Virus record (IMG/VR): IMGVR_UViG_3300028800_000001
Coordinates: 1 to 64,000 of that record
Reading direction: 5' to 3' (one strand)
Length of the DNA: 64,000 nucleotides
Each line of letters starts with the position of its first letter. The stretch's first letter is position 1. Position numbers and translations under genes: made by a program. Under the pieces are notes generated by a model. The model was not told the DNA's origin, made no database searches, and saw only the letters and a program-made list of their open reading frames with translations. Shown here one piece after another: positions 1,836 through 42,904 of this stretch.

Positions 1836-2117
1836 CTACAGCTCCTTTGCGCGTGCTTCAATTTGTGTTTCATACTTCTCGGCATTGATCACAACATCGC
1901 GGCTGTAGTTCACTAGCCCCTTGCAGACGATTTGCTGTTCAATTTCAGCGTGGTAGAGGACGGTCTCCAGGTGATATTGCCAGTCTTCTCTGTCGGTTCC
2001 TTCAACTTCAGGCTGCATACCTTCGCGACGATTCCAGGCCAGGTAATTGAGAATAGCGTTATCAATCTCTGGCTCTGAAAATGCTCGTTCGTAGTACTCG
2101 CTATAATAGACGTTCAT
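1836..2117 (-). CDS. hypothetical protein, paralog of 1527-1835
   Basis: As above. Confidence 0.75.
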   Translation of the reverse strand: MNVYYSEYYERAFSEPEIDNAILNYLAWNRREGMQPEVEGTDREDWQYHLETVLYHAEIEQQIVCKGLVNYSRDVVINAEKYETQIEARAKEL

Positions 2118-2129
2118 GCTGTTCCTTTC

Positions 2130-2348
2130 TTATAAGTAATCTTGTTCCCAGGCAGCGGGTACGCCACCAGATTCGTAGTCTTCTAGTTCTTGTGTTGGAT
2201 CATCGTGTTCATCATCTTGCGCTTCAGAAAACGACCAGGAGATACCTTGCGCCATTCCTTCGTAGATGCCGTTTTGGAGGCACTCGCGTATTTCATCAAG
2301 TGCCTCGTCTATCCCTTGCCAACTCCATCCATCAATAACTAGTTTCAT
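2130..2348 (-). CDS. small acidic hypothetical protein
   Basis: RBS, 72-aa ORF. Confidence 0.65.
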   Translation of the reverse strand: MKLVIDGWSWQGIDEALDEIRECLQNGIYEGMAQGISWSFSEAQDDEHDDPTQELEDYESGGVPAAWEQDYL

Positions 2349-2358
2349 TGCTTTCCCC

Positions 2359-2823
2359 TTATTCGTAGAGATAAAAAGTACAGTCCAGCCGCTTCAGGTT
2401 TCCTGGTTCGGTGAGCAGTTCGCGTATCCCTTGAATGCCTTTACGACTACGCCAGGGCAGACCACCAAGACCGCACCCAAGTTTAGGGAGCGCGACGCTA
2501 GTCAACCCCTCTTGCTTCACAAGTTGCTCTAGTTGCAGAATGCCAGCCATCAGGTATTCATAGGTAGAAGGTTCCTGCCACTCCACTTTGGTTGGAAAGT
2601 TGATCAACCAGGGCTCGCTTTCACGAAACAGAGTCATTGGTAAATTTGGATAAATCCGCATACTGCGGCACTGTTGCCGGTACTCTTCGAACCATGCAGG
2701 ATAGCGTTTGCGCGCCTCGTAGGCCAATCCTGCACCAGCAACACCCCGACAGTTCACCGCAACGGCAATGGCCTGTGCTTCGGTCGTGAAGATGTTTTCT
2801 CCTACTACTTCGATAAAAGGCAT
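2359..2823 (-). CDS. macrodomain protein (TARG1/DarG/Poa1p-like ADP-ribose glycohydrolase)
   Basis: Motifs G.NIF, AVNCRGVAGAGLA, INFPTK, ALPKLGCGLGGL; start MPFIEV at 2823. Confidence 0.9.
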   Translation of the reverse strand: MPFIEVVGENIFTTEAQAIAVAVNCRGVAGAGLAYEARKRYPAWFEEYRQQCRSMRIYPNLPMTLFRESEPWLINFPTKVEWQEPSTYEYLMAGILQLEQLVKQEGLTSVALPKLGCGLGGLPWRSRKGIQGIRELLTEPGNLKRLDCTFYLYE

Positions 2824-3557
2824 TAAAAATCCTCTTCCTTCCACGCAGCAACCGGCGCGGTGTCTTGTGTGAGCTCTTGCCCACACAGCAGCGCCCAATA
2901 GAGCGCATCTTGCAACAATTTTTCTCCCAGACTTTGTTGGCTATACGCCTTTTTCCAGGCAAGGCTATATTTACCCCTTATTTTTTGTAGGTAAACGTGA
3001 AGATCACCAGACTGAAAATGGTAATTCTTACCGTTAGCAACGTGCGCTGCAAGTTCACGCACATACTGATCGCTAAAGGGCATGGGATATTTTTCTACAG
3101 GGCTCGTTGCGTTACGTGCAATCATGCGCTCTAGCTCTTTGCGGTGTGCGCTCAAAAATTCGTAAAGGGTTGCAATATCAGCAACAGGGAAGAAATCACC
3201 ATCCAGGTATGCCTGATGCTCTCCTTTTTCAAAGAAGAAAGCGATGGCATCTTCGTCACGGCTAAGCACTTTTCCAGGCGGAACAAAGAGCTTACTATCA
3301 CGGGGAAACGCAACGAGAAGCCCAAGAGTGGTTGCCCAGGTGTCCAGGTAGAGTAAGAGCGTTTGCATTTCCTCCAGGCCGTACCAGCAATCTCTGAGCA
3401 TTATCCCATAGCGCAAATCGTCATTGAGCACGAGCGAAACGAAGCCATGTTCTGTAAGGGTAATATCTCCCTGTTCTCCGGCCTGTTTCTCTGCCTGCTC
3501 TTGTGAGAGGCCGTACCAGCGCAACTCTTCTATTCTGGTGAACTTTTCATCCATCAT
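2823..3557 (-). CDS. hypothetical protein
   Basis: 244-aa ORF, coupled overlaps. Confidence 0.75.
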   Translation of the reverse strand: MMDEKFTRIEELRWYGLSQEQAEKQAGEQGDITLTEHGFVSLVLNDDLRYGIMLRDCWYGLEEMQTLLLYLDTWATTLGLLVAFPRDSKLFVPPGKVLSRDEDAIAFFFEKGEHQAYLDGDFFPVADIATLYEFLSAHRKELERMIARNATSPVEKYPMPFSDQYVRELAAHVANGKNYHFQSGDLHVYLQKIRGKYSLAWKKAYSQQSLGEKLLQDALYWALLCGQELTQDTAPVAAWKEEDF

Positions 3558-3748
3558 TCTTTTCCTCCAATGTGTACTACAAGCGTCTCTTCTTGTAGTG
3601 CTTTGTAATTCCAGCAGCGCTCATCTAAAGTGGCGCGTACATACGCGTTTATCTCTTCTTGCGTCATCGGGTGCGGAAGGCGCACAATACAGCGCTGCTC
3701 TAGCGTTGCCTGTACCGTGACACAAATCTCAATTGGGGTAGTCTTCAT
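3554..3748 (-). CDS. hypothetical protein
   Basis: 64 aa, ATGA overlaps. Confidence 0.65.
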   Translation of the reverse strand: MKTTPIEICVTVQATLEQRCIVRLPHPMTQEEINAYVRATLDERCWNYKALQEETLVVHIGGKE

Positions 3749-10494: not shown

Positions 10495-11184
10495 CTACAA
10501 CTCCCGCATCATAGTAAGAAGTGGCGCATATTCCACGTGCATGTATGCTATCTCTTCGCGAATTTGCATAAGCAAACTCTTGCGTGTCAAGCGGCCATGG
10601 AACTCCTTCTCAGGAGCTAATAGCGCCGCTTTCTCAGCGCTTTCTGCGCTATGGTGCATACCGCTGCCAAAGACCGCCTCTCCCGCTTCGTAGTGCGCTT
10701 CCGCGCTGGTATAGACGTAGGAACCATCATTTAAACGCACAATCCAGTGCCAGGAAGGTTCCTTTTCGGTAGCCTCAACTTCTGCCAGGATCGTGTCCAC
10801 GTCTTCCGCACTATACATGCGACCAATAGTATCCAGACAGGAGACCAGTGCATTATCAACAGCAATACGCTTTGCACCGGTTTTGAGCAGGGCAATCTCC
10901 AACTGCAAGGCTTCAACTTCACGCTTATGACGAGAATCATATTCCAAGATTGCGAAGATGTTCTCTGTCATGGCCTTGGAGGCCGCACGTGAGTCTTCGA
11001 TTTGCACGCCCAGATGCTTACTGTTCATGTCGCGCACCACGTGCTCTACTAGGTACCAAAGCGCATTTTCGATATAGCCAGGAAGTTCAAAGTAGGTTGG
11101 CTGATAGGTCTCGATATATTGCATGATTTGCGCCTTCATGCGCAAGACATTGTCTTGATACGGTGAGAGCAAATCGTCTTCCAT
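10495..11184 (-). CDS. hypothetical protein
   Basis: RBS AAGGAG before MEDDLL. Confidence 0.75.
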   Translation of the reverse strand: MEDDLLSPYQDNVLRMKAQIMQYIETYQPTYFELPGYIENALWYLVEHVVRDMNSKHLGVQIEDSRAASKAMTENIFAILEYDSRHKREVEALQLEIALLKTGAKRIAVDNALVSCLDTIGRMYSAEDVDTILAEVEATEKEPSWHWIVRLNDGSYVYTSAEAHYEAGEAVFGSGMHHSAESAEKAALLAPEKEFHGRLTRKSLLMQIREEIAYMHVEYAPLLTMMREL

Positions 11185-11194
11185 CGTGTTCTCC

Positions 11195-11530
11195 TTACAT
11201 AGAAAGTATGCTGTAATCGTGCTGATCAAGCGCACGACCAATCAGCGCAATACGATAATTTGGCTGCTCTTGGAGCGTGAGCGCAATGTGACTTTCTTCC
11301 TGCATGGCGAAGATGCCATCGTAGTAGAGACTTCTTGCGTTTACTATAGCTTCAATCCATTCTAAGAGCTCGCGAGCCAGCGCAATATCTTCTGGTGACC
11401 ATCCAGCCACCGCTTCACTGCCGCTGGGCATTTCTTTGAGCTCTTCGTCAAACTGTGCCAACGTCAGGTGCATCGCCTCATCGAAACTGAGGGTCTGCCC
11501 CTGTTCTAAGAGTTGTGTACTTGGACTCAT
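11195..11530 (-). CDS. hypothetical protein
   Basis: 111 aa, ATGA overlap. Confidence 0.7.
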   Translation of the reverse strand: MSPSTQLLEQGQTLSFDEAMHLTLAQFDEELKEMPSGSEAVAGWSPEDIALARELLEWIEAIVNARSLYYDGIFAMQEESHIALTLQEQPNYRIALIGRALDQHDYSILSM

Positions 11531-11841
11531 TCAGCAAAGCTCCAGTCGTGCGTAAAGACAATATAAGCCACGAGCAGCTCCCAATAGACACTTTCCGTCC
11601 AATAGCGCCGCTCATAACGCATGCCGCCCCTATGGTGTTCTGAGAGCCATGTACGTAGCTCCAATACCTTCTCCCAGGCCACGCTCACGGCGTATTCCAG
11701 GCTGGTCTCTAAACAGGAAGAAATAGTGCAGAGCGCATCTTTATAGGCTTCATCGCGTATACTTCTTACTGGACTATTCATCTTCTCTTCTGCAATGAAG
11801 TGATAATACGCAATCACTTCCTCCAGACTGTCATAGTACAT
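11527..11841 (-). CDS. hypothetical protein
   Basis: 104 aa, coupled to tmk. Confidence 0.7.
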   Translation of the reverse strand: MYYDSLEEVIAYYHFIAEEKMNSPVRSIRDEAYKDALCTISSCLETSLEYAVSVAWEKVLELRTWLSEHHRGGMRYERRYWTESVYWELLVAYIVFTHDWSFAE

Positions 11842-12451
11842 ATCCTTTTTCCTTTAGGTATGAATAAGCAATAACTATGATGATATCGTGCAAGTCTTCT
11901 CTTGAGCGCGTGGCGTCCAGCACAAGTAGTCGTTTTGGGTGCTCTTTGGCGTATTCAAGATAGAGTGCACGTGTTTTCTGGTGCACTTCTAGCTCTCTTG
12001 TTTCGAAGCGGTCACCACTGGTTGTGTAGCGTTTTGCCGGATCTAGATCAAGCAGAAACGTAAGATCGGGTCGGAGACCATCACTTGCGAGCAACGAGAG
12101 CGCTTCAGCAAGACCGGTTCCTATTTTCTGGCCCTGATACACCACACTTGAGTCATAAAAGCGATCTGTAATGACGTGTGTACCGTTTGCAAGCGCAGGT
12201 AAGATCACTTTTTCAACATGCTCTGCACGTGCGGCCTGAAACAAGAAGGACTCAGCCAGTGCCGCAGGCTCATGTGCTTCAAGTAGTACAGTGCGTAGCT
12301 TTTCGCCAAAGGGTGTGCCTCCTGGCTCACGGGTACACAGGCAAGAGAGATGCTGGTGGGTAAACCACGCTTCAAGCAGTGCCACCTGTGTACTCTTGCC
12401 GGTACCATCAATTCCCTCGAAAGAAAAGAATACTCCCCTTTTCACAGTCAT
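11831..12451 (-). CDS. tmk: thymidylate kinase
   Basis: P-loop EGIDGTGKST, TREPGGT, DRF..S...YQG, PDLTFLLD. Confidence 0.95.
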   Translation of the reverse strand: MTVKRGVFFSFEGIDGTGKSTQVALLEAWFTHQHLSCLCTREPGGTPFGEKLRTVLLEAHEPAALAESFLFQAARAEHVEKVILPALANGTHVITDRFYDSSVVYQGQKIGTGLAEALSLLASDGLRPDLTFLLDLDPAKRYTTSGDRFETRELEVHQKTRALYLEYAKEHPKRLLVLDATRSREDLHDIIIVIAYSYLKEKGYVL

Positions 12452-12456
12452 CTCCT

Positions 12457-12912
12457 TTAGCTATCAAACCAGACAACAAGCCGACAATAGCAGGGGCGCA
12501 CGATAGGATCGTAATAGGCGTCACGGCCTTCGTCTTCAAAAACCGAAGTATCAGGCGTAAAGTGCCCGTTGAGATAAAACATCATCAAGATGAGTAACTT
12601 CCAACCCTGCGGATACTCGATATCATTTTGCGTGGCGAGAATCTCTTTGAAACTAATCCAGGTAGGATCATCTCCAATTTCACGTTTGGCGTAGTCTCCA
12701 TGTTCGTAGCGAAAGAGAGAAATGTCTGCGTCATCAGGAATGCCACGGTCTGCCGCAACAGGCACATAGTGCTCATAGTTGCGCACACCAAAGAGCCGCG
12801 CAAACACATCATAGTTACGACCGGCAAGCGGTGAAATGTCCATGATTTTCTGCCAGCGTGTTGACCAGGGGTAGGGCACAATTTCAATGTGCCCATGAAT
12901 ATCAGTACCCAT
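12457..12912 (-). CDS. conserved phage hypothetical protein, paralog of 56721-57224
   Basis: MGTDIH..RNY..F..LFGVR..RG.P..RLVVWFD. Confidence 0.8.
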   Translation of the reverse strand: MGTDIHGHIEIVPYPWSTRWQKIMDISPLAGRNYDVFARLFGVRNYEHYVPVAADRGIPDDADISLFRYEHGDYAKREIGDDPTWISFKEILATQNDIEYPQGWKLLILMMFYLNGHFTPDTSVFEDEGRDAYYDPIVRPCYCRLVVWFDS

Positions 12913-22057: not shown

Positions 22058-22172
22058 AAATAAAATGAGGCAGAAAACTGCCTCGCTCGTGCTTTGTTAC
22101 TACCTGTATGCGGATTACATAGTCTACCCTCCAGCTTTGGGACAATTAGAACATTCGTTTTTCTCTTCCTCA

Positions 22173-22229
22173 AGTATATGCGAAAGAAAAGCTTTTTGTC
22201 AATAGTTTCTTCTATTTATTTTCAGAAAG
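22173..22229 (-). promoter_or_regulatory. class I promoter + box
   Basis: TTGACA-18-TATACT; centre 22224 (22 nt). Confidence 0.85.
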
Positions 22230-22679
22230 CAAAGTGATCGCATGTCGCACAACGGTTTGTCGCGTTGAGTCGAAATTCAACCGATAATGCTCTTTGGCGC
22301 GCTCAAGAATGGGAAGCGGGTCAACACCCCAACGGTCAAGCCGATCAAGCATGAGCGAAAGCGCAAGGTATTCTTCGGCTGCGGCCATGTGAATACCCTC
22401 TTGCTCGTCACCATCATTGCTGCGACGAAGATACGAACGCGAATATTCAAAGAGTTGTTGTGCAACCACACTCTTTTCTTTTTCTTCACGCGCTTCTTCG
22501 TCAGGGATGGAAGAGATTTTTCTTGCCATCAGCTCGTCGGTATATTGCTTCAGGAGTGGTCTTGCACTATCGGTGACTGCGAGGCGGAATTCTTCGCCTT
22601 CGCTGGTTTTGAAGATAGCTTCTTGTTCACCTTCCCGATTCGTTTTTACGGTATATTGGACAAATTGGACTTGTTTCAT
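22212..22679 (-). CDS. hypothetical protein ending ...SENK inside the promoter box
   Basis: RBS AAGGAG, 155 aa. Confidence 0.75.
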   Translation of the reverse strand: MKQVQFVQYTVKTNREGEQEAIFKTSEGEEFRLAVTDSARPLLKQYTDELMARKISSIPDEEAREEKEKSVVAQQLFEYSRSYLRRSNDGDEQEGIHMAAAEEYLALSLMLDRLDRWGVDPLPILERAKEHYRLNFDSTRQTVVRHAITLLSENK

Positions 22680-22702: not shown

Positions 22703-22737
22703 AAAAAAAAGCGCCCCCCAGATGTATGAGGAGCGCT
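22703..22737 (-). terminator. intrinsic terminator after tRNA-like RNA
   Basis: AGCGCTCCTC/GGGGGGCGCT + T8. Confidence 0.85.
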
Positions 22738-22740
22738 AAC

Positions 22741-22797
22741 TCGGCTAGCGCGGAATTGAACCGCGCATAAGAAGTCTTACCGTTAGACCATAGCCGA
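22741..22797 (-). ncRNA. tRNA-like RNA lacking the anticodon arm
   Basis: TCGGCTA/TAGCCGA acceptor, D-arm GTCT-AACGGTA-AGAC, 7-nt linker, T-arm GCGCGG-TTCAATT-CCGCGC. Confidence 0.8.
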
Positions 22798-22941
22798 ACC
22801 AGAACAGATGTACATGTACCAGAATACCCGCCAAAGAAGTTCTCAAAGTAGCTTTTTCGAGGAGTCTACTCGTCAACGAATACTTCTTTGTGTGTAAAAC
22901 AATGGTTACAGGAGCCGACTGTGTACGTTCGGCTCATCACT

Positions 22942-22997
22942 ACTATAGCAGAAACCTTCGCTCCCTGTCAAGAGTTTCTTCTATTTATTTTCTGAAC
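22942..22997 (-). promoter_or_regulatory. class I promoter driving the non-coding tRNA-like unit
   Basis: TTGACA-18-TATAGT; centre 22993 (22 nt). Confidence 0.8.
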
Positions 22998-23080
22998 TAG
23001 CGTGAAACTTTCTGGCCGATGTAGATGCCGGATGCGAGTGCATACAAAGTGACCACAGCCACAAGCATTTTCTTGTTCAT
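22997..23080 (-). CDS. 27-aa hydrophobic peptide (not in ORF track)
   Basis: RBS AAGGAG; MNKKMLVAVVTLYALASGIYIGQKVSR; stop abuts the box. Confidence 0.55.
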   Translation of the reverse strand: MNKKMLVAVVTLYALASGIYIGQKVSR

Positions 23081-23382
23081 GTTCCTTCTCCTTTCTTTGC
23101 AAAAACGTAGTCCTCTTCGATTAACCAGATATGCCCATCAATGATCACAGGTACATGCTTTTCGTGTGGATCAGCGCGTTCCTCTTGCTCGATCCAGCGC
23201 TGTATATCAGGAAGATCAGAGCGCAGGTAGGTGCCAACGGTGACCGATACATAGCGCCCGATACCTGGGCACAAGGGATGCAAAAAGATGATGCGTGGAT
23301 CAATCCAGACCATCATCCCTGGCCGAAAGAGCCGGTGCGTGTATGGTATTTTATGGAGAGCGCGTTCGAATGCGTCGCTCAT
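23077..23382 (-). CDS. hypothetical protein
   Basis: ATGA overlaps. Confidence 0.7.
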   Translation of the reverse strand: MSDAFERALHKIPYTHRLFRPGMMVWIDPRIIFLHPLCPGIGRYVSVTVGTYLRSDLPDIQRWIEQEERADPHEKHVPVIIDGHIWLIEEDYVFAKKGEGT

Positions 23383-39094: not shown

Positions 39095-39532
39095 CTACAA
39101 AGTTTTCTTTCGATTAAGTTTGACACCTTCGTTTGCAATGGGTCTTTTATTGTATCTTTCTGGCAAGTGTGACCCATTTTTATTCACTATCGCGTTTAAG
39201 CAAGGCCCAAGACGATAGATAAGCTCTTCCTCGCATGTTTGGATAAAAACATCGTGCATTGCTATTTGCTCATACTCTTTTGCCGTAATTAATTCTTTAA
39301 GTTCCCATATCTCCATCGTCCAATTAAGAGATTCTGGCATATTGTCAAGAATAATTTGACCAACCCTGTCGGGCCAGGGAAGGCGAGCGCCTTTTCCCAG
39401 GTGTTCAAGTAGTCTGGTATAAGGATGAATAGAGCGCCCAACATAGAAGATAGTATCTTCATCTCTGTAGACATAGAGGCATTGCTCCTCCTCGAATGTT
39501 TCCATTGCTTTGCCAATAGTAGTTTGTATCAT
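39095..39532 (-). CDS. GIY-YIG nuclease family protein
   Basis: CLYVY...FYVGRS...RLLEH...E...P.LN. Confidence 0.8.
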   Translation of the reverse strand: MIQTTIGKAMETFEEEQCLYVYRDEDTIFYVGRSIHPYTRLLEHLGKGARLPWPDRVGQIILDNMPESLNWTMEIWELKELITAKEYEQIAMHDVFIQTCEEELIYRLGPCLNAIVNKNGSHLPERYNKRPIANEGVKLNRKKTL

Positions 39533-40638
39533 TCGTCATCTTCCTCGCTAATAATAACCCCATCGTTTGCGATAGAGCCGCGCTTTGCATAGTAAAGGGG
39601 CATGTGCGGAGTTTTCCAGCCTCCACCACTTTGCACTTTATCAAGCGGCGTGCCATTTTTGAGTGCGTCATAGACCCAAAAGTGTCTGGCATCGTGAGGT
39701 GAGAGATTTTTTACCCCAATTGTTTCTCCAAGAGTACGAACACGGGCATTGATAGCGCGTCTCGTAATGCGTTTGTTTTCGTAGCCCAGGAAAAGTGGCC
39801 CTGCCGTTCTTGGTATTCCAGCGACGCCTTCCTTGAGCATTCCTATATAATTCTCAGCCGCAATACGCGTATGCTTTTTAAGTTTTTGTTTATCGTGAAG
39901 ATTTGTCTTTTCATGATAGATATGCACATTGCCGGTCTGAAGGGAAAAATCTTCAATATTAAGATTGGCAACTTCGCCACAGCGTAATGCATGCTCAAAA
40001 AGCAATCCCGTAAGTAAGGCATCTCTCGCGGCCATTAATTCCTGCTGTTCCTTACTTTGTTTCTTCGGCTGCGTCGTCGCTCTCTTGATTTTAAAAACTT
40101 TTGACGTTTCTATTTCGACCGCATTTTCTTTTTTATTTCCAATGCGTGTTGGCACACCATCAGCGATTCGCTCATGATCACGATTTACTGCGAGCTTTCC
40201 ACTTTTGCCTCGCACCAATTGAATGAGATGTAATTCTTCGAGAGAAAGGAGTCCGGCCTGTTCAACAAGGTTACAATACTTCTTGATCGTGGTGAGGTAG
40301 ACGCAGATCGATCCCATTGCATACCCTTTGTTTTCCAACCAGACCTGAAAGCCAGAAACCAGGGCATCATTTATACCTTCCCAACTTTCAGGAATTTCGT
40401 AGAGTTCTTCTGATGCTCTGCCAACGCCAACAGCATAGAGGTAATTGCTGAAATGAGTCAGATCATTTTTCTGCCGCCTGCGGGTGTTTTCGGTGAGTCC
40501 TTTATGGTATTCGAGAAAGATATTGCTTGCCCTTGCTTTTCTGGCAGCGTTTCCAGCGCGATACAAATCGTCAGGATACAGTTGATCTGAAACACTGGTA
40601 TCCGTGACAAAGATAGTGATCGCCTTTTCTTCTTCCAT
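39529..40638 (-). CDS. tyrosine recombinase/integrase
   Basis: ALRCGEVA.L, K, SPHDARH, GGW, LYY (R-K-H-R-W-Y catalytic set). Confidence 0.92.
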   Translation of the reverse strand: MEEEKAITIFVTDTSVSDQLYPDDLYRAGNAARKARASNIFLEYHKGLTENTRRRQKNDLTHFSNYLYAVGVGRASEELYEIPESWEGINDALVSGFQVWLENKGYAMGSICVYLTTIKKYCNLVEQAGLLSLEELHLIQLVRGKSGKLAVNRDHERIADGVPTRIGNKKENAVEIETSKVFKIKRATTQPKKQSKEQQELMAARDALLTGLLFEHALRCGEVANLNIEDFSLQTGNVHIYHEKTNLHDKQKLKKHTRIAAENYIGMLKEGVAGIPRTAGPLFLGYENKRITRRAINARVRTLGETIGVKNLSPHDARHFWVYDALKNGTPLDKVQSGGGWKTPHMPLYYAKRGSIANDGVIISEEDDE

Positions 40639-40706
40639 TAAGTTTGTTTCCTTTGAAATTTTCTATTTCCGATTTGTATCCATAATCGGCACTGGTTTAT
40701 ACGACC

Positions 40707-40761
40707 ATTATAGAACATTCTTTCTTTGCCGTCAAGGGTTATTTCTTGGTATATTCAGAAG
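40707..40761 (-). promoter_or_regulatory. class I promoter driving integrase
   Basis: TTGACG-17-TATAAT; centre 40757 (22 nt). Confidence 0.85.
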
Positions 40762-40824
40762 ATGGCTGCGCAGGCCGATGTATGATATACTGGTCGCTAC
40801 TTTATTGAATTGAAAGGGAAAATT

Positions 40825-41187
40825 ATGAACACGCCTGATATCATTGCCCTTTGCCAACTCATATTATCTGCTCTTGTTGCTCTTATTGGTGGAACTCTAG
40901 CAATAGCTGCTTATCTCAGAGTTCTCAAAACCACAGACGAAAATACCAGGGCTAGAAAAGAAGAGATAGGAAAAGACATTGAAATAAGAAAGAACGAATT
41001 AAAACAGGCCGGTGATCAACTACAACAATTAATGACTTCCAGTGGACAGCAATGGGAAGCTAGTATTAAAAGAGATAAATACGCTGTCGCCGGACTTATG
41101 ATTTTAGCGATCTGCTTTTTACTAATATCAGAAAACAAAATATCCAAAATATCAAACGAAATTCGAGGTCAAAAACGTGGAGAATGA
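40825..41187 (+). CDS. membrane protein with coiled coil
   Basis: Two TM segments, AT-rich. Confidence 0.7.
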   Translation: MNTPDIIALCQLILSALVALIGGTLAIAAYLRVLKTTDENTRARKEEIGKDIEIRKNELKQAGDQLQQLMTSSGQQWEASIKRDKYAVAGLMILAICFLLISENKISKISNEIRGQKRGE

Positions 41188-41217
41188 TTTTTCATTCTTT
41201 TGACGATGGACTTGGCA

Positions 41218-41248
41218 CCGCAAGTGTTTTTCTATGCATATTCAGAAG
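41218..41248 (-). promoter_or_regulatory. decayed class I promoter copy
   Basis: caagtgtttttctatgcatattcagaa resembles 14930-14957; -35/-10 degenerate. Confidence 0.5.
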
Positions 41249-41379
41249 GCAAGGTCAAAGGCCAGCCGGAACATATGTTCGATAGCCAAAAATATTTTGG
41301 GGCTTCTGCATCTGCCGTCAACGAGTTAGAATGCAGGAGCATCATTGTAGAACCTAGTCTGTTTTAGAAGGAGTCGCTC

Positions 41380-41685
41380 ATGATAAATGAGTACGCCCTG
41401 TTTTTTCGCGATAAAAATGGTAACATCTGTGGTGGTCAAAGCCACGACAAAGCGAATTTTTTAACCTCTGGAATAGTTGATGACAAGGCAGTCTTAGCCA
41501 TAGAACTATCCGTTCTAAAAAGATATCTTGAAGGAAATATCCCAAATGGCGCTCATAGCGTAGAGATACATAAGATGCTTCCTGAAGAAACGCTCTCTCA
41601 ACTAATTGAGAGAATTAATGTTGACCATTTAAAACCAATCACTTCGATCAATAAAAGCGATCTAAATTTGGAGGAAGCAAAATGA
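41380..41685 (+). CDS. hypothetical protein
   Basis: RBS AAGGAG. Confidence 0.7.
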   Translation: MINEYALFFRDKNGNICGGQSHDKANFLTSGIVDDKAVLAIELSVLKRYLEGNIPNGAHSVEIHKMLPEETLSQLIERINVDHLKPITSINKSDLNLEEAK

Positions 41686-42146
41686 AGAGACTTTGCTATA
41701 TAAAGCACGAAGGCATAATTCATATAGGTGTAGATACAAAACATCCCAACCCATTTTGGTCTTACGGAGATGGGACAAAAAAATGTTGCGATACCAAGAT
41801 TATCGGCGCTTACGAGCATGGACTACTATCTCTTGATAGGATTTTCTCTTCGAGAGAACTTTGCCAAGATTGCAACAAAAGTTGGAACGATGTGGATTTC
41901 TTAATAGAGTGCGAGCCCACGCCTGTTTTTGAACTATGGCGCGGCGACAAGCACCTAGTTGATTTCTCTACTGAAGAATTAAAAGAGATGATCAATAAAG
42001 ATACTGATTTACCAATGGAGCTGGTAACGCATGGATATCATCAACAAGTTCCCTTCATTGGCAGGCATATTGTTTTTGAAACTCTTGCAGAAACAATAGA
42101 AGGAATTAAAACAGAGATTGCCAATAGAGAGCAAGCGAAAAGTTAA
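41682..42146 (+). CDS. hypothetical protein
   Basis: RBS GGAGG, ATGA overlap. Confidence 0.7.
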   Translation: MKRLCYIKHEGIIHIGVDTKHPNPFWSYGDGTKKCCDTKIIGAYEHGLLSLDRIFSSRELCQDCNKSWNDVDFLIECEPTPVFELWRGDKHLVDFSTEELKEMINKDTDLPMELVTHGYHQQVPFIGRHIVFETLAETIEGIKTEIANREQAKS

Positions 42147-42212
42147 GCTTGACAGACGTGATATGCTCCAGATTATCACAAGGTCGAAAATTTTCAGAAA
42201 GGATAAAAGCCA

Positions 42213-42311
42213 ATGGAACTTTTCGCCCGAATAATCGGCACCACAATTGGTGGCATTGTTGGTACTTGGATTACCAACGAGATCATTAAAAATTGGAGAA
42301 AGAATAAATAA
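42213..42311 (+). CDS. 32-aa hydrophobic peptide, type I toxin-like (not in ORF track)
   Basis: RBS AAAGGA; MELFARIIGTTIGGIVGTWITNEIIKNWRKNK; terminator follows. Confidence 0.6.
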   Translation: MELFARIIGTTIGGIVGTWITNEIIKNWRKNK

Positions 42312-42330
42312 CGCTCCAATTCTAAAGGCA

Positions 42331-42371
42331 ATAAAAGCACCTTGAATTTTGATCAAGGTGCTTTTATTTTT
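42331..42371 (+). terminator. intrinsic terminator
   Basis: AAAAGCACCTTGA/TCAAGGTGCTTTT. Confidence 0.8.
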
Positions 42372-42382
42372 GGAGGAATTTT

Positions 42383-42904
42383 ATGAAAAAATCTTTCTTT
42401 TTGTTTATGCTGTTATTTTTGTCAGCTTGCGGTTCAGCCGCTCCTTCTAATAGCGCCGCTACCAAAATAGCGCCCACTGCAACGCCGCAAGTTGTCTTTT
42501 ATGGCACTGTCGGAAAGCCAATTATTATGATCCCTTGGAAGATATCGCTCGAATCAGTAAAAATAATTGATCCGGCAACCATTCCGCAACACGATCAAAT
42601 ATTTCCATCCGTTACTGCCAATCAGCATTTTCTTCTTCTGAATGAGCATATAGAAAATATCTCAAATTCTTCTGCAAATGTTGGAGGGATGCAGTTTGCG
42701 TTGCAAAATACGAATGGAGATAGTTTTTCTGAGCAATTGGGGCTTCCTGGCATTGACTCGTCAGGTCTTGGAGGAACAATGGCACCTTCGATACAGCAGG
42801 CCGGACAGCAAGTTTACATTGTGCCAACCAGCGAGCATTCTTTTCTCTGGATCTATACCGCAGACGATAACTTGCATCAAATCATTTGGAAGTTTAGTGC
42901 GTAG
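42383..42904 (+). CDS. lipoprotein, DUF4352-like Ig fold
   Basis: Lipobox LSAC; ENIS...F.LQN.NG..F. Confidence 0.75.
   Translation: MKKSFFLFMLLFLSACGSAAPSNSAATKIAPTATPQVVFYGTVGKPIIMIPWKISLESVKIIDPATIPQHDQIFPSVTANQHFLLLNEHIENISNSSANVGGMQFALQNTNGDSFSEQLGLPGIDSSGLGGTMAPSIQQAGQQVYIVPTSEHSFLWIYTADDNLHQIIWKFSA

What the first reader, a model, noticed from the sequence alone, without database searches (positions are those of the whole stretch)
22703..22997. Stand-alone ~230-nt ncRNA unit ending in a tRNA-like fold with no anticodon arm
Seen: promoter (22942-22997), then a 5' hairpin (22912-22935), a long imperfect hairpin (22832-22890), a 57-nt tRNA mimic (22797-22741) and a terminator (22703-22737). 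The mimic has a 7-bp acceptor stem U1-A72, discriminator G, no encoded CCA, a normal D-arm, a 6-bp T-stem with TTCAATT loop, and only TTCTTAT where the anticodon and variable arms (~23 nt) should be. An 8-bp inverted repeat (22792-22799 vs 22927-22934) lets the RNA 5' end pair with the 5' acceptor strand, giving a possible switch. Established: U1-A72 is typical of bacterial tRNA-Gln/Asn and is the GatCAB identity element; tRNA-like RNAs without decoding function exist (YrlA Y RNAs, mascRNA). Inference: a decoy or mimic, e.g. for host anticodon nucleases, synthetases, RNase P or T-box/stringent sensing.
Basis: partly seen in the sequence, partly recalled or inferred. Interest (0 to 1): 0.8.

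Follow-up and report, generated by a model that had tools for sequence, protein, structure and literature searches.

The report
Phage mini-tRNA without an anticodon arm
A giant soil phage carries, under its own early promoter and terminator, a small RNA gene ending in a glutamine-tRNA copy whose anticodon arm is cleanly missing; similar non-decoding "mini-tRNAs" recur in other large phages, so this looks like a selected but unexplained class of viral RNA.

Summary
On the minus strand there is a consensus promoter (22971-22942), a structured leader of about 140 nt, a 57-nt tRNA-like fold (22797-22741) and a strong terminator (22737-22703). The fold has a 7-bp acceptor stem, a normal D-arm, a 7-nt linker instead of the anticodon and variable arms, and a 6-bp T-arm.

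- **Not an artefact:** the sequence is identical in at least 7 independent assemblies.
- **Not detected by standard tools:** ARAGORN and Rfam find nothing here.
- **Origin:** its D-arm, T-loop and U1-A72 pair match a full-length phage tRNA-Gln(UUG).
- **Relatives:** armless tRNA-likes with fully compensated stems occur in other large phage contigs, mostly packed inside tRNA gene arrays. One pattern gave 3 true cases among 4 viral hits and none among 20 hits in 596 Gb of cellular genomes.

My best reading is a non-decoding mini-tRNA, made early and matured by host tRNA-processing enzymes. It would mimic the tRNA acceptor and elbow as a decoy for a host tRNA-binding or tRNA-targeting factor. That function is inferred, not shown. 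The main rival is an RNase P/Z processing signal like plant mitochondrial t-elements.

No expression data were available, and no divergent relative of the whole unit was found.

The parts
22942..22997 (-). Early sigma-70-type promoter. It has an AAAATA upstream element (22991), -35 TTGACA (22971-22966), an 18-nt spacer with TG, and -10 TATAGT (22947-22942). The transcription start is inferred at about 22937-22934.
   Evidence: 11 of 12 consensus positions, extended -10. Searches show at least 9 promoters of the same design on the minus strand.
22911..22935 (-). 5'-terminal hairpin GAGCCGA-(loop)-UCGGCUC. Its 5' strand can instead pair with positions -2 to 6 of the tRNA-like acceptor strand (22799-22792).
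   Evidence: The hairpin alone folds at -11.5 kcal/mol. The alternative long-range helix has about 15% ensemble probability.
22833..22889 (-). Long imperfect hairpin, the core of the roughly 140-nt 5' domain. Its apical loop contains CUCCUC. A single-stranded stretch, 22813-22799, follows it.
   Evidence: No homolog was found, so there is no covariation test.
22741..22797 (-). tRNA-like domain of 57 nt without an anticodon arm. It has a 7-bp acceptor stem (U1-A72), U8, and a 4-bp D-stem with loop AACGGUA (A14, G18, G19, A21). A 7-nt linker UUCUUAU follows, then a 6-bp T-stem with loop UUCAAUU. U22798 is position -1 and G22740 is the discriminator. No CCA is encoded.
   Evidence: Searches give the sequence and fold. 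Searches show the fold is conserved with 17 of 18 pairs covarying across 7 sequences. Searches show the D-arm and T-loop are identical to a phage tRNA-Gln(UUG). Searches show no tRNA or Rfam match.
22703..22737 (-). Intrinsic terminator: an 11-bp G+C-rich stem, a 6-nt loop and a run of 8 T (7 T in some strains).
   Evidence: One search gives -18.4 kcal/mol. Searches show the T-run length polymorphism.
22212..22679 (-). Downstream 155-aa gene with no known relatives. Its ribosome-binding site AAGGAG and ATG start 24 nt after the terminator T-run, and no separate consensus promoter precedes it. It can therefore only be reached from this promoter by terminator read-through.
   Evidence: One search finds no homolog among 5.8 billion proteins. 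Searches give no family or fold lead.
22067..22222 (-). Twin promoter with an identical 20-nt upstream region: TTGACA, 18 nt, TATACT. A leader of about 100 nt and a terminator (22084-22067) follow, ahead of a 70-aa membrane-protein gene. The architecture matches the main unit but contains no tRNA-like fold.
   Evidence: One search shows the leader is not unusually structured (z -0.2).

Best explanation
**Shown.** The unit is a real, independently transcribable non-coding RNA gene of a roughly 327-kb phage-like contig from rhizosphere metagenomes. It is driven by one of the phage's host-type (sigma-70-like) early promoters and closed by a strong intrinsic terminator. Its 3' domain is a tRNA-Gln-type molecule from which the anticodon stem-loop (positions 27-43) is absent. 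The acceptor stem, U8, D-arm (A14, G18, G19, A21), an A15/U48 pair and the T-arm are intact. It can therefore form the acceptor-T helix and the D/T-loop elbow, but it cannot read a codon.

**Inferred processing.** The roughly 230-nt primary transcript would be handled like the last tRNA of an operon. Host RNase P would cut 5' of U22797, which is preceded by the favoured U at position -1. The terminator trailer would be trimmed and CCA added. The products would be a mini-tRNA of about 57-60 nt and a 5' RNA of about 140 nt.

**Inferred function, least certain.** The mini-tRNA is itself the effector. It would be a non-decoding mimic of the tRNA acceptor and elbow that occupies or diverts a host factor recognising tRNA without reading the anticodon. 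The most plausible target is an anti-phage enzyme that attacks tRNA acceptor ends or the elbow, or a tRNA-Gln-specific factor. Translation would not be disturbed.

**Possible gating.** The near-isoenergetic pairing of the RNA's 5' end with the acceptor 5' strand could control maturation.
For: - **Transcription unit:**
  - The promoter matches 11 of 12 consensus positions with an extended -10.
  - It belongs to a family of at least 9 promoters.
  - The terminator is strong.
  - No gene was called in the 396-nt gap.
- **Fold:**. Only the minus strand scores well, 97 versus 14 bits.
- **tRNA-Gln ancestry:** the 15-nt D-arm and the T-loop are identical to a full-length phage tRNA-Gln(UUG), which also has U1-A72. 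In another roughly 321-kb contig an armless copy sits directly 5' of two tRNA-Gln genes.
- **Selection rather than decay:**
  - All 17 stem pairs are Watson-Crick.
  - Armless relatives in unrelated phage contigs keep the fold: 100% of cells are paired and 17 of 18 pairs change on both sides, against 31-44% of cells paired in slid controls.
  - The closest relative, L111/L159, shares the D-arm 3' strand, linker style and T-loop, while all 7 acceptor pairs differ yet still pair.
- **Product rather than mere signal:** in other phages the armless genes are packed like ordinary tRNA genes. L076 lies 4 and 7 nt from tRNA-Phe and tRNA-Thr, L027 about 6 nt from tRNA-Gln, and L056 15 nt from a tRNA.
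- **Virus-specific:** the same pattern gave 3 true armless cases in 4 viral hits and 0 in 20 hits across 596 Gb of cellular genomes.
- **Real sequence:** identical in at least 7 assemblies and 4 further runs.
- **Processing competence, from the literature:** tRNA-like elements lacking the anticodon arm serve as RNase P/Z signals (PMC5499578). RNase P guide RNAs lacking the anticodon stem-loop direct cleavage well (PMC4693268).
Against: - There are no expression or end-mapping data. No RNA run holding the sequence was listed, so transcription, RNase P cleavage and CCA addition are all inferred.
- No target factor is known, and no neighbouring gene gives a hint.
- The decoy idea rests on analogy with full-length phage tRNAs that counter tRNA-cleaving defences.
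- The T-stem has 6 bp, so the acceptor-T helix has 13 bp instead of 12. U(-1) can also pair with G73. Either feature could shift or hinder RNase P cleavage.
- Here, unlike in the other phages, the element follows a structured 140-nt RNA and precedes a terminator that abuts a gene. That arrangement fits a processing-signal or leader role equally well.
- The armless copy in L027 has many G-U pairs and could be decaying.
- The covariation alignment was fitted to the model, and its members were partly selected for pairing.
Confidence: 0.35

Rival explanations
1. **Processing signal (t-element-like punctuation).** The tRNA-like fold has no function as a free molecule. It recruits RNase P and RNase Z to cut the transcript at defined points. 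That would give the 140-nt 5' RNA a precise 3' end. In read-through transcripts it would give the 155-aa mRNA a 5' end that begins with the protective terminator hairpin.
For: - Plant mitochondrial t-elements are degenerate tRNAs that lack the anticodon arm and act as RNase P/Z cleavage signals at mRNA ends (PMC5499578).
- In the window the fold sits exactly between a strongly structured 5' RNA and the leader of a gene that lacks its own promoter.
- In L011, armless tRNA-likes lie at boundaries. One starts at the stop codon of a TnpB-like ORF. Several precede a conserved RNA-like segment of about 200 nt. About a dozen shorter ones punctuate an array at 110-150-nt spacing.
- In L111/L159 the element separates a conserved structured spacer from an HNH gene.
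Against: - In L076, L027 and L056 the armless genes are flanked within 4-15 nt by ordinary tRNAs, which already provide RNase P/Z sites. A punctuation role is redundant there.
- A terminator placed directly after the 5' RNA would define its 3' end more simply.
- No data show cleavage.
Confidence: 0.27
2. **Cis-acting leader or attenuator.** The whole 260-nt RNA is the 5' leader of the 155-aa gene. The choice between the tRNA-like fold and the fold pairing the 5' end with the acceptor strand, or the binding of a tRNA-recognising factor, would set how much transcription passes the terminator or how the mRNA is translated.
For: - The terminator T-run ends 24 nt before the ATG, and no other consensus promoter serves the gene.
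- The twin promoter at 22222-22173 has the same layout of promoter, leader, terminator and gene. Seven other family promoters run straight into a ribosome-binding site.
- Two folds lie within 1.4 kcal/mol of each other.
Against: - Neither alternative fold touches the terminator stem. The only antiterminator-like pairing, GCGCUA/UAGCGC, has 6 bp against a terminator of -18.4 kcal/mol.
- Related armless elements in other phages are not followed by terminators and genes in this way.
- No covariation data exist for the leader.
Confidence: 0.12
3. **Aminoacyl carrier.** After CCA addition the mini-tRNA is charged by a synthetase that does not need the anticodon. It then donates the amino acid in a non-ribosomal reaction, or sequesters a synthetase or amidotransferase.
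For: - The acceptor stem, discriminator and elbow are intact.
- From established knowledge, not tested here: some synthetases charge acceptor-T minihelices. GatCAB recognises U1-A72 and the D-loop of tRNA-Gln rather than the anticodon.
Against: - There is no G3-U70 (alanine) and no G-1 (histidine).
- From established knowledge, GlnRS and GluRS depend on the anticodon.
- Acceptor sequences and discriminators differ among the armless relatives, G in the window and A elsewhere. That argues against one shared amino-acid identity.
- No transferase gene was seen in the window.
Confidence: 0.05
4. **Decaying tRNA-Gln pseudogene.** The element is a deletion remnant that happens to lie between a promoter and a terminator and has no function.
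For: - It clearly derives from a tRNA-Gln-type gene.
- Only near-identical strains of this phage are available, about 0.3% divergence. Purifying selection on this copy therefore cannot be measured.
Against: - Every stem is perfect and the tertiary-contact bases are intact.
- It has a dedicated consensus promoter and terminator.
- The same architecture, with a linker of about 4-12 nt at the same junction, recurs with compensatory changes in unrelated phages.
- It was absent from the cellular-genome hits.
Confidence: 0.06

Closest known systems
Plant mitochondrial t-elements (for example upstream of A. thaliana nad6)
   Same: Both are degenerate tRNA-like folds with acceptor-stem and T-arm mimics, a conserved T-loop and no anticodon arm. 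Both are placed at the ends of other RNAs. T-elements are thought to be cut by RNase P and/or RNase Z (PMC5499578).
   Different: T-elements are organellar, not viral, and are described as degenerate. The phage element has perfect stems, a fully canonical D-arm, and its own promoter and terminator. Its relatives sit inside tRNA arrays like ordinary tRNA genes. Cleavage has not been shown for the phage element.
mascRNA at the 3' end of MALAT1, and the MEN-beta tRNA-like (from my own knowledge)
   Same: A tRNA-like fold lies at the 3' end of a longer non-coding RNA. RNase P cleavage releases both a small CCA-tailed tRNA-like RNA that does not decode and the mature upstream RNA.
   Different: These are eukaryotic nuclear RNAs, and mascRNA keeps a small anticodon-like stem. 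Here that arm is entirely absent, and the element is followed by a bacterial intrinsic terminator.
Phage T4 RNAC and RNAD (species 1 and 2 RNAs)
   Same: They are small stable phage RNAs of unknown function encoded in the tRNA gene region (PMC3014915, PMC9697503). The rnaC sequence carries a canonical T-arm, CCGGG-UUCGAAU-CCCGG, 9 nt from its annotated 3' end.
   Different: They are 139 and 119 nt long and are not a compact acceptor/D/T fold. They score only 16 bits with the armless model. They are reported as late RNAs, whereas the window unit has an early-type promoter.
Full-length phage-encoded tRNAs used against tRNA-cleaving defences (T5 tRNA-Tyr versus a retron; T6 tRNA-Tyr versus Septu)
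   Same: These are phage-borne tRNA genes whose products counter host nucleases that attack tRNA (bioRxiv 10.1101/2023.03.15.532788; PMC13096335). They are the precedent for the decoy or replacement idea.
   Different: Those are complete decoding tRNAs that replace the cleaved host tRNA. The window element has no anticodon. It could only act as a mimic for factors that read the acceptor or elbow.
YrlA-type bacterial Y RNAs and the tmRNA tRNA-like domain
   Same: Both are non-decoding RNAs with tRNA-like T and D or acceptor modules.
   Different: In both, the 5' and 3' ends of a larger RNA close the tRNA-like module, and they work with Rsr/Ro or SmpB. Here the module is self-contained. Rfam and ARAGORN give no YrlA or tmRNA match. 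No TROVE-domain gene was seen in the window.

Membership tests
Canonical decoding tRNA | 7-bp acceptor stem, D-arm with G18 G19, and T-arm with a UUCRANY loop | tested here: met
   The T-stem has 6 bp rather than 5.
Canonical decoding tRNA | Anticodon stem with a 7-nt anticodon loop | tested here: not met
   Only UUCUUAU (7 nt) lies between the D-arm and the T-arm. ARAGORN finds no tRNA in the window. No Rfam tRNA match appears even at E<=10.
tRNA-Gln lineage (ancestry, not function) | Gln-type D-arm, U1-A72 and T-loop shared with a bona fide tRNA-Gln | tested here: met
   The tRNA-Gln(UUG) in L183 has the identical D-arm GUCUAACGGUAAGAC, the same T-loop GGUUCAAUUCC, and U1-A72.
t-element-like processing signal | tRNA-like fold with acceptor and T-arm but no anticodon arm | tested here: met
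   definition from PMC5499578.
t-element-like processing signal | Located at the 5' or 3' end of another functional RNA or mRNA | tested here: inconclusive
   It lies 3' of a structured 140-nt RNA and 5' of the 155-aa gene. Relatives, however, lie inside tight tRNA arrays.
t-element-like processing signal | Cleaved by RNase P and/or RNase Z in vivo | not testable with these tools
   No RNA run was listed.
Y RNA (YrlA) | Match to the family model, a Ro-binding stem formed by the RNA termini, and an rsr gene nearby | tested here: not met
   No Rfam match. The fold is closed locally. No TROVE domain was found among 120 window ORFs.
tmRNA | tRNA-like domain closed by the 5' and 3' ends, plus a tag reading frame | tested here: not met
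   ARAGORN finds no tmRNA. Only a 7.9-bit partial hit to a tmRNA model was seen.
Terminator/antiterminator riboswitch-like leader | Intrinsic terminator directly upstream of the regulated gene | tested here: met
Terminator/antiterminator riboswitch-like leader | A mutually exclusive antiterminator structure of comparable stability | tested here: not met
   The two near-isoenergetic folds both keep the terminator. The only competing helix has 6 bp.
Phage armless tRNA-like set defined here | Acceptor stem, D-arm, a linker of about 4-12 nt and T-arm, with covarying stems, in viral contigs | tested here: met
   Members are the window, L111/L159, L027, L056/L120/L136, L011 (several copies) and L076.

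The most novel reading that the evidence does not exclude
Large phages carry a previously undescribed class of anticodon-less mini-tRNA genes, transcribed and matured like tRNAs. They would work as RNA decoys against host immunity enzymes that recognise the tRNA acceptor end or elbow, such as acceptor-stem nucleases or enzymes that modify the 3' end. The window copy would be a tRNA-Gln-specific version expressed immediately after infection, with release gated by a 5'-end/acceptor switch.
Probability: 0.2. Interest if true: 0.85.

Novelty: new variant of a known kind. Interest (0 to 1): 0.62.

Why it matters
- **A blind spot in annotation.** tRNA finders and Rfam miss these genes entirely, so phage annotation currently overlooks them. 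One 180-kb contig with no ARAGORN tRNA call holds at least 17 such elements.
- **A possible counter-defence tool.** If the mini-tRNAs are decoys, they would be an RNA-only counter-defence against tRNA-targeting immunity. They would also be a ready-made tool for probing which host factors read tRNA without its anticodon.
- **A possible processing system.** If they are processing signals, they would be a natural viral counterpart of plant t-elements and of the tRNA-flanked guide-RNA arrays used in engineering.
- **Easy to test.** The unit has a host-type promoter and can be expressed and mapped in a laboratory strain.

Tried and rejected
- **Standard detectors.** ARAGORN and Rfam, at gathering threshold and at E<=10, recognise nothing here.
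- **Known phages.** No match in 50,697 phage records at DNA or protein level, for this window or for the L011 relative. For L111, the only hits were to flanking sequence, mainly its tRNA-Asn gene.
- **Synteny through the 155-aa neighbour.** No homolog exists beyond identical copies.
- **Expression data.** No RNA run was listed. The DNA runs are all rhizosphere metagenomes.
- **Strain variation as a test of constraint.** There are 7 variable sites in 3 kb and none in the 295-nt unit, but only about 0.7 would be expected, so this is uninformative. The shared contig break at 22877 turned out to be a low-coverage break.
- **Other copies in the window.** None was found with filters off.
- **Trans targets of the 5' RNA.** Only chance-level complementarities of 11-13 nt.
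- **Neighbouring proteins.** Pfam, PHROGs and the ESM Atlas gave no tRNA-related lead.
- **attP remnant.** Rejected. The integrase gene is 17 kb away, and an attP would carry a contiguous 3' tRNA part, not both halves.
- **Protein similarity to other armless-bearing contigs.** None in the fetched pieces.
- **Complex prediction with tRNA-processing enzymes.** Not run. Shuffled-RNA controls would not discriminate anything beyond the presence of a T-arm.
- **Literature.** Searches found no description of anticodon-armless tRNA-like genes in phages.
Full report
**Source of the window**

The window is the first 64 kb of a 327,295-bp viral contig (IMGVR_UViG_3300028800_000001 = Ga0265338_10000021), and window coordinates equal contig coordinates.
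- DNA runs that hold it are all rhizosphere metagenomes.
- It has no DNA or protein match among 50,697 deposited phage genomes.
- Nearly all genes are small, lie on the minus strand and have no known family. The few recognisable ones are thymidylate kinase, a pyrimidine-dimer glycosylase, MazG, HNH endonucleases, helix-turn-helix proteins and a tyrosine integrase.
- This looks like the early region of a jumbo phage.

**The observation**

- **Promoter:** -35 TTGACA (22971-22966), an 18-nt spacer ending in TG, and -10 TATAGT (22947-22942).
- **5' hairpin:** GAGCCGA/UCGGCUC, about 22935-22911.
- **Long hairpin:** 22889-22833.
- **tRNA-like fold (22797-22741):** acceptor UCGGCUA/UAGCCGA with U1-A72, U8 G9, D-arm GUCU-AACGGUA-AGAC, linker UUCUUAU, and T-arm GCGCGG-UUCAAUU-CCGCGC. 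The discriminator is G22740 and no CCA is encoded.
- **Terminator (22737-22703):** an 11-bp stem plus eight T.

All 17 stem pairs are Watson-Crick. Bases that build the tRNA elbow are in place: U8, A14, G18, G19, A21, U54-U55-C56, A58, G53-C61 and a possible A15-U48 pair. Folding z-scores are -3.3 for the tRNA-like part and -3.8 for the unit. ARAGORN finds no tRNA or tmRNA in the whole window. Rfam finds nothing at gathering threshold and only noise at E<=10.

**Not an artefact**

The unit is letter-for-letter identical in seven contigs assembled independently from different samples. It is also identical in contigs of four further runs. The only variant is 7 versus 8 T in the terminator. Strains differ by only about 0.3%, so the absence of substitutions in 295 nt says nothing about constraint.

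**A true transcription unit**

The promoter is one of at least nine minus-strand promoters that share the design AAAATA, 12-16 nt, TTGACx, 17-18 nt, TATACT.
- Seven of them run straight into a ribosome-binding site within 10-45 nt.
- Two are different: this one and a twin at 22222-22173 with an identical 20-nt upstream region.
- Both of these are followed by a leader and an intrinsic terminator before the next gene.
- The twin's leader is not unusually structured.
- The gene callers of the source assemblies placed no gene in the 396-nt gap.

The 155-aa gene downstream starts 24 nt after the T-run and has no consensus promoter of its own. The RNA is therefore also that gene's potential leader. 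The protein has no homolog in 5.8 billion sequences and no family or fold lead.

**Origin of the fold**

A search for the same D-arm and T-loop separated by a normal-length gap found one full-length phage tRNA, tRNA-Gln(UUG) in a 205-kb contig. It has the identical 15-nt D-arm, the identical T-loop and a U1-A72 pair. The window element is therefore a tRNA-Gln-type molecule minus positions 27-43. Its 7-nt linker corresponds to position 26 plus the variable loop.

**Relatives**

A pattern that requires the D-loop and the T-loop to lie too close together for an anticodon arm gave 4 hits in viral contigs.
- Three hits are true armless tRNA-likes: the window, L027/L012 and L011.
- In metagenome contigs the only true hits were the same two jumbo contigs.
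- In 596 Gb of bacterial and archaeal genomes there were 20 hits and none was tRNA-like.

Looser patterns and covariance models added more cases.

| Locus | Contig size | Context |
|---|---|---|
| L111/L159 | 132 and 131 kb | The closest relative: same AGAC strand, linker UUUUAAU and T-loop UUCAAUU. All seven acceptor pairs differ but still pair. It lies in a tRNA cluster between a conserved structured spacer and an HNH gene. |
| L027 | 321 kb | About 6 nt upstream of tRNA-Gln(CUG) and tRNA-Gln(UUG). |
| L076 | 239 kb | 4 and 7 nt from tRNA-Phe and tRNA-Thr. |
| L056/L120/L136 | 35-kb contig (L056) | L056 lies 15 nt from a tRNA. |

On a model-based alignment of seven sequences, every cell pairs. 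Seventeen of 18 pairs change on both sides, against 31-44% of cells paired when the partners are slid. Two caveats apply: the alignment is fitted to the model, and some members were chosen for pairing. A model built from these sequences scores ordinary tRNAs by treating the anticodon arm as an insertion. That shows what the family is: a tRNA without that arm. The window holds only one copy.

**How it most likely works**

*Shown:* it is a promoter-to-terminator non-coding unit whose 3' domain keeps every part of a tRNA except the decoding arm. The architecture recurs under compensatory change in large phages.

*Inferred:* host enzymes that recognise only the acceptor-T helix and the elbow should treat it as a pre-tRNA.
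- These enzymes are RNase P, 3' trimming enzymes, the CCA-adding enzyme and T-loop modifiers.
- U at position -1 fits this reading.
- Literature on anticodon-less RNase P substrates and signals supports it (PMC5499578, PMC4693268).

In four other phage lineages the armless genes are packed like ordinary tRNA genes, where extra cleavage signals would be redundant. I therefore favour the free mini-tRNA as the functional product. It would be a non-decoding mimic that engages a host factor reading tRNA without the anticodon. A decoy for tRNA-targeting immunity is the most attractive version, by analogy with full-length phage tRNAs that counter such systems (bioRxiv 10.1101/2023.03.15.532788; PMC13096335). 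This last step is inference only, and I give the whole package 0.35.

**Rivals**

- **Processing signal, like t-elements or mascRNA (0.27).**
  - For: it is the closest documented precedent, and it fits the window's layout.
  - For: it also fits L011, where armless elements sit at the end of a TnpB-like ORF, before a conserved segment of about 200 nt, and as repeated punctuation of an array.
- **Leader or attenuator (0.12).**
  - For: the twin-promoter architecture, and a second fold only 1.4 kcal/mol above the best.
  - Against: neither fold touches the terminator.
- **Aminoacyl carrier (0.05) and pseudogene (0.06).**
  - Against the carrier: known anticodon-independent identity marks are absent.
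  - Against the pseudogene: the stems are perfect, the unit has dedicated signals, and the architecture recurs.

**Deviations worth noting**

- The 6-bp T-stem gives a 13-bp acceptor-T helix.
- U(-1) can pair with G73 and extend it to 14 bp, which may shift RNase P cleavage.
- The 5' hairpin stem is an inverted copy of the acceptor stem.
- CUCCUC motifs occur in the apical loop of the long hairpin and in the terminator 5' strand. They could pair with Shine-Dalgarno sequences, but this is unsupported speculation.

**Novelty**

Non-decoding tRNA-like RNAs are known. Examples are t-elements, mascRNA, Y RNAs, the tmRNA tRNA-like domain and T4 RNAC/RNAD, whose function is unknown (PMC3014915, PMC9697503). 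I found no description of anticodon-armless tRNA-like genes in phages. A large survey of viral structured RNAs mentions only "tRNA-like" candidates that overlap ARAGORN calls (PMC10690425). I rate this a new variant of a known kind.

Noticed in passing
L011 (IMGVR_UViG_2529292852_000001, 180 kb), minus strand, 349-412, 2051-3612, 10700-12752: ARAGORN calls no tRNA here, yet the locus holds at least 17 tRNA-like elements of 47-65 nt without an anticodon arm, in two types. Four longer ones are each followed by a conserved segment of about 200 nt starting GGAGGACGCTTGTTCT, and one begins at the stop codon of a 551-aa TnpB-like ORF. About a dozen shorter ones of 47-52 nt form an array at 110-150-nt spacing, each followed by a small AGGGU...ACCCU hairpin.
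   Followed up: partly
window, minus strand: 60676, 32858, 32500, 30004, 25229, 22991, 22222, 7309, 1221 (promoter starts): A family of host-type promoters shares an upstream AAAATA(C/A)A element, TTGACx, a 17-18-nt spacer and TATACT. These are probably the phage's early promoters. A 36-nt piece of this motif also produced a 'goes back' joint in one contig.
   Followed up: partly
window 22067-22222 (-): A twin of the ncRNA promoter, with an identical 20-nt upstream region, is followed by a poorly structured leader of about 100 nt and a terminator directly before a 70-aa membrane-protein gene with a TTG start. This may be a second early terminated transcript or an attenuated leader.
   Followed up: partly
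L012 3665-3738, L027 932-1005, L183 8511-8590: tRNAs with a CUA anticodon, labelled tRNA-Pyl by ARAGORN, occur in the tRNA clusters of two other large phage contigs. They may be amber-suppressor tRNAs, which would hint at TAG recoding in those phages.
   Followed up: no
L123 236-288 (-): A 53-nt tRNA-like has an acceptor stem, a T-arm and a single 5-bp arm whose 7-nt loop is AUGGUAA. U33 and A37 fit an anticodon loop reading GGU. It may be a D-arm-less tRNA rather than an anticodon-less one.
   Followed up: no
L046 2187-2255 (+): A 69-nt tRNA-like upstream of a tRNA-Ser pair has its anticodon arm reduced to a 4-bp stem with a 4-nt loop. It is intermediate between a full tRNA and the armless form, and resembles mascRNA.
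   Followed up: no
L120 9810-9945 (-) and L056 9048-9138 (-): Directly downstream of the armless elements lie oversized tRNA-like genes. In L056 this is a 91-nt 'tRNA-Ile(UAU)'. In L120 it is a sequence of about 130 nt with acceptor, D and T arms that ARAGORN does not call. They may carry introns or long insertions.
   Followed up: no
window 39529-42904: A tyrosine integrase gene on the minus strand sits next to a block of plus-strand genes, the only sizeable plus-strand block in the window. The GC content dips to 0.41-0.43 here. This may be a lysogeny-like or acquired module in a jumbo phage.
   Followed up: no
window 23002-23082 (-): An uncalled 27-codon ORF (MNKKMLVAVVTLYALASGIYIGQKVSR) with a good ribosome-binding site ends just before the ncRNA promoter. 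It may encode a small membrane peptide.
   Followed up: no
L182 (phage T4) 2909-3047 (-): T4 rnaC (species 1 RNA, function unknown) contains a canonical T-arm, CCGGG-UUCGAAU-CCCGG, 9 nt from its annotated 3' end. Its 5' and 3' ends can form an imperfect acceptor-like stem.
   Followed up: partly
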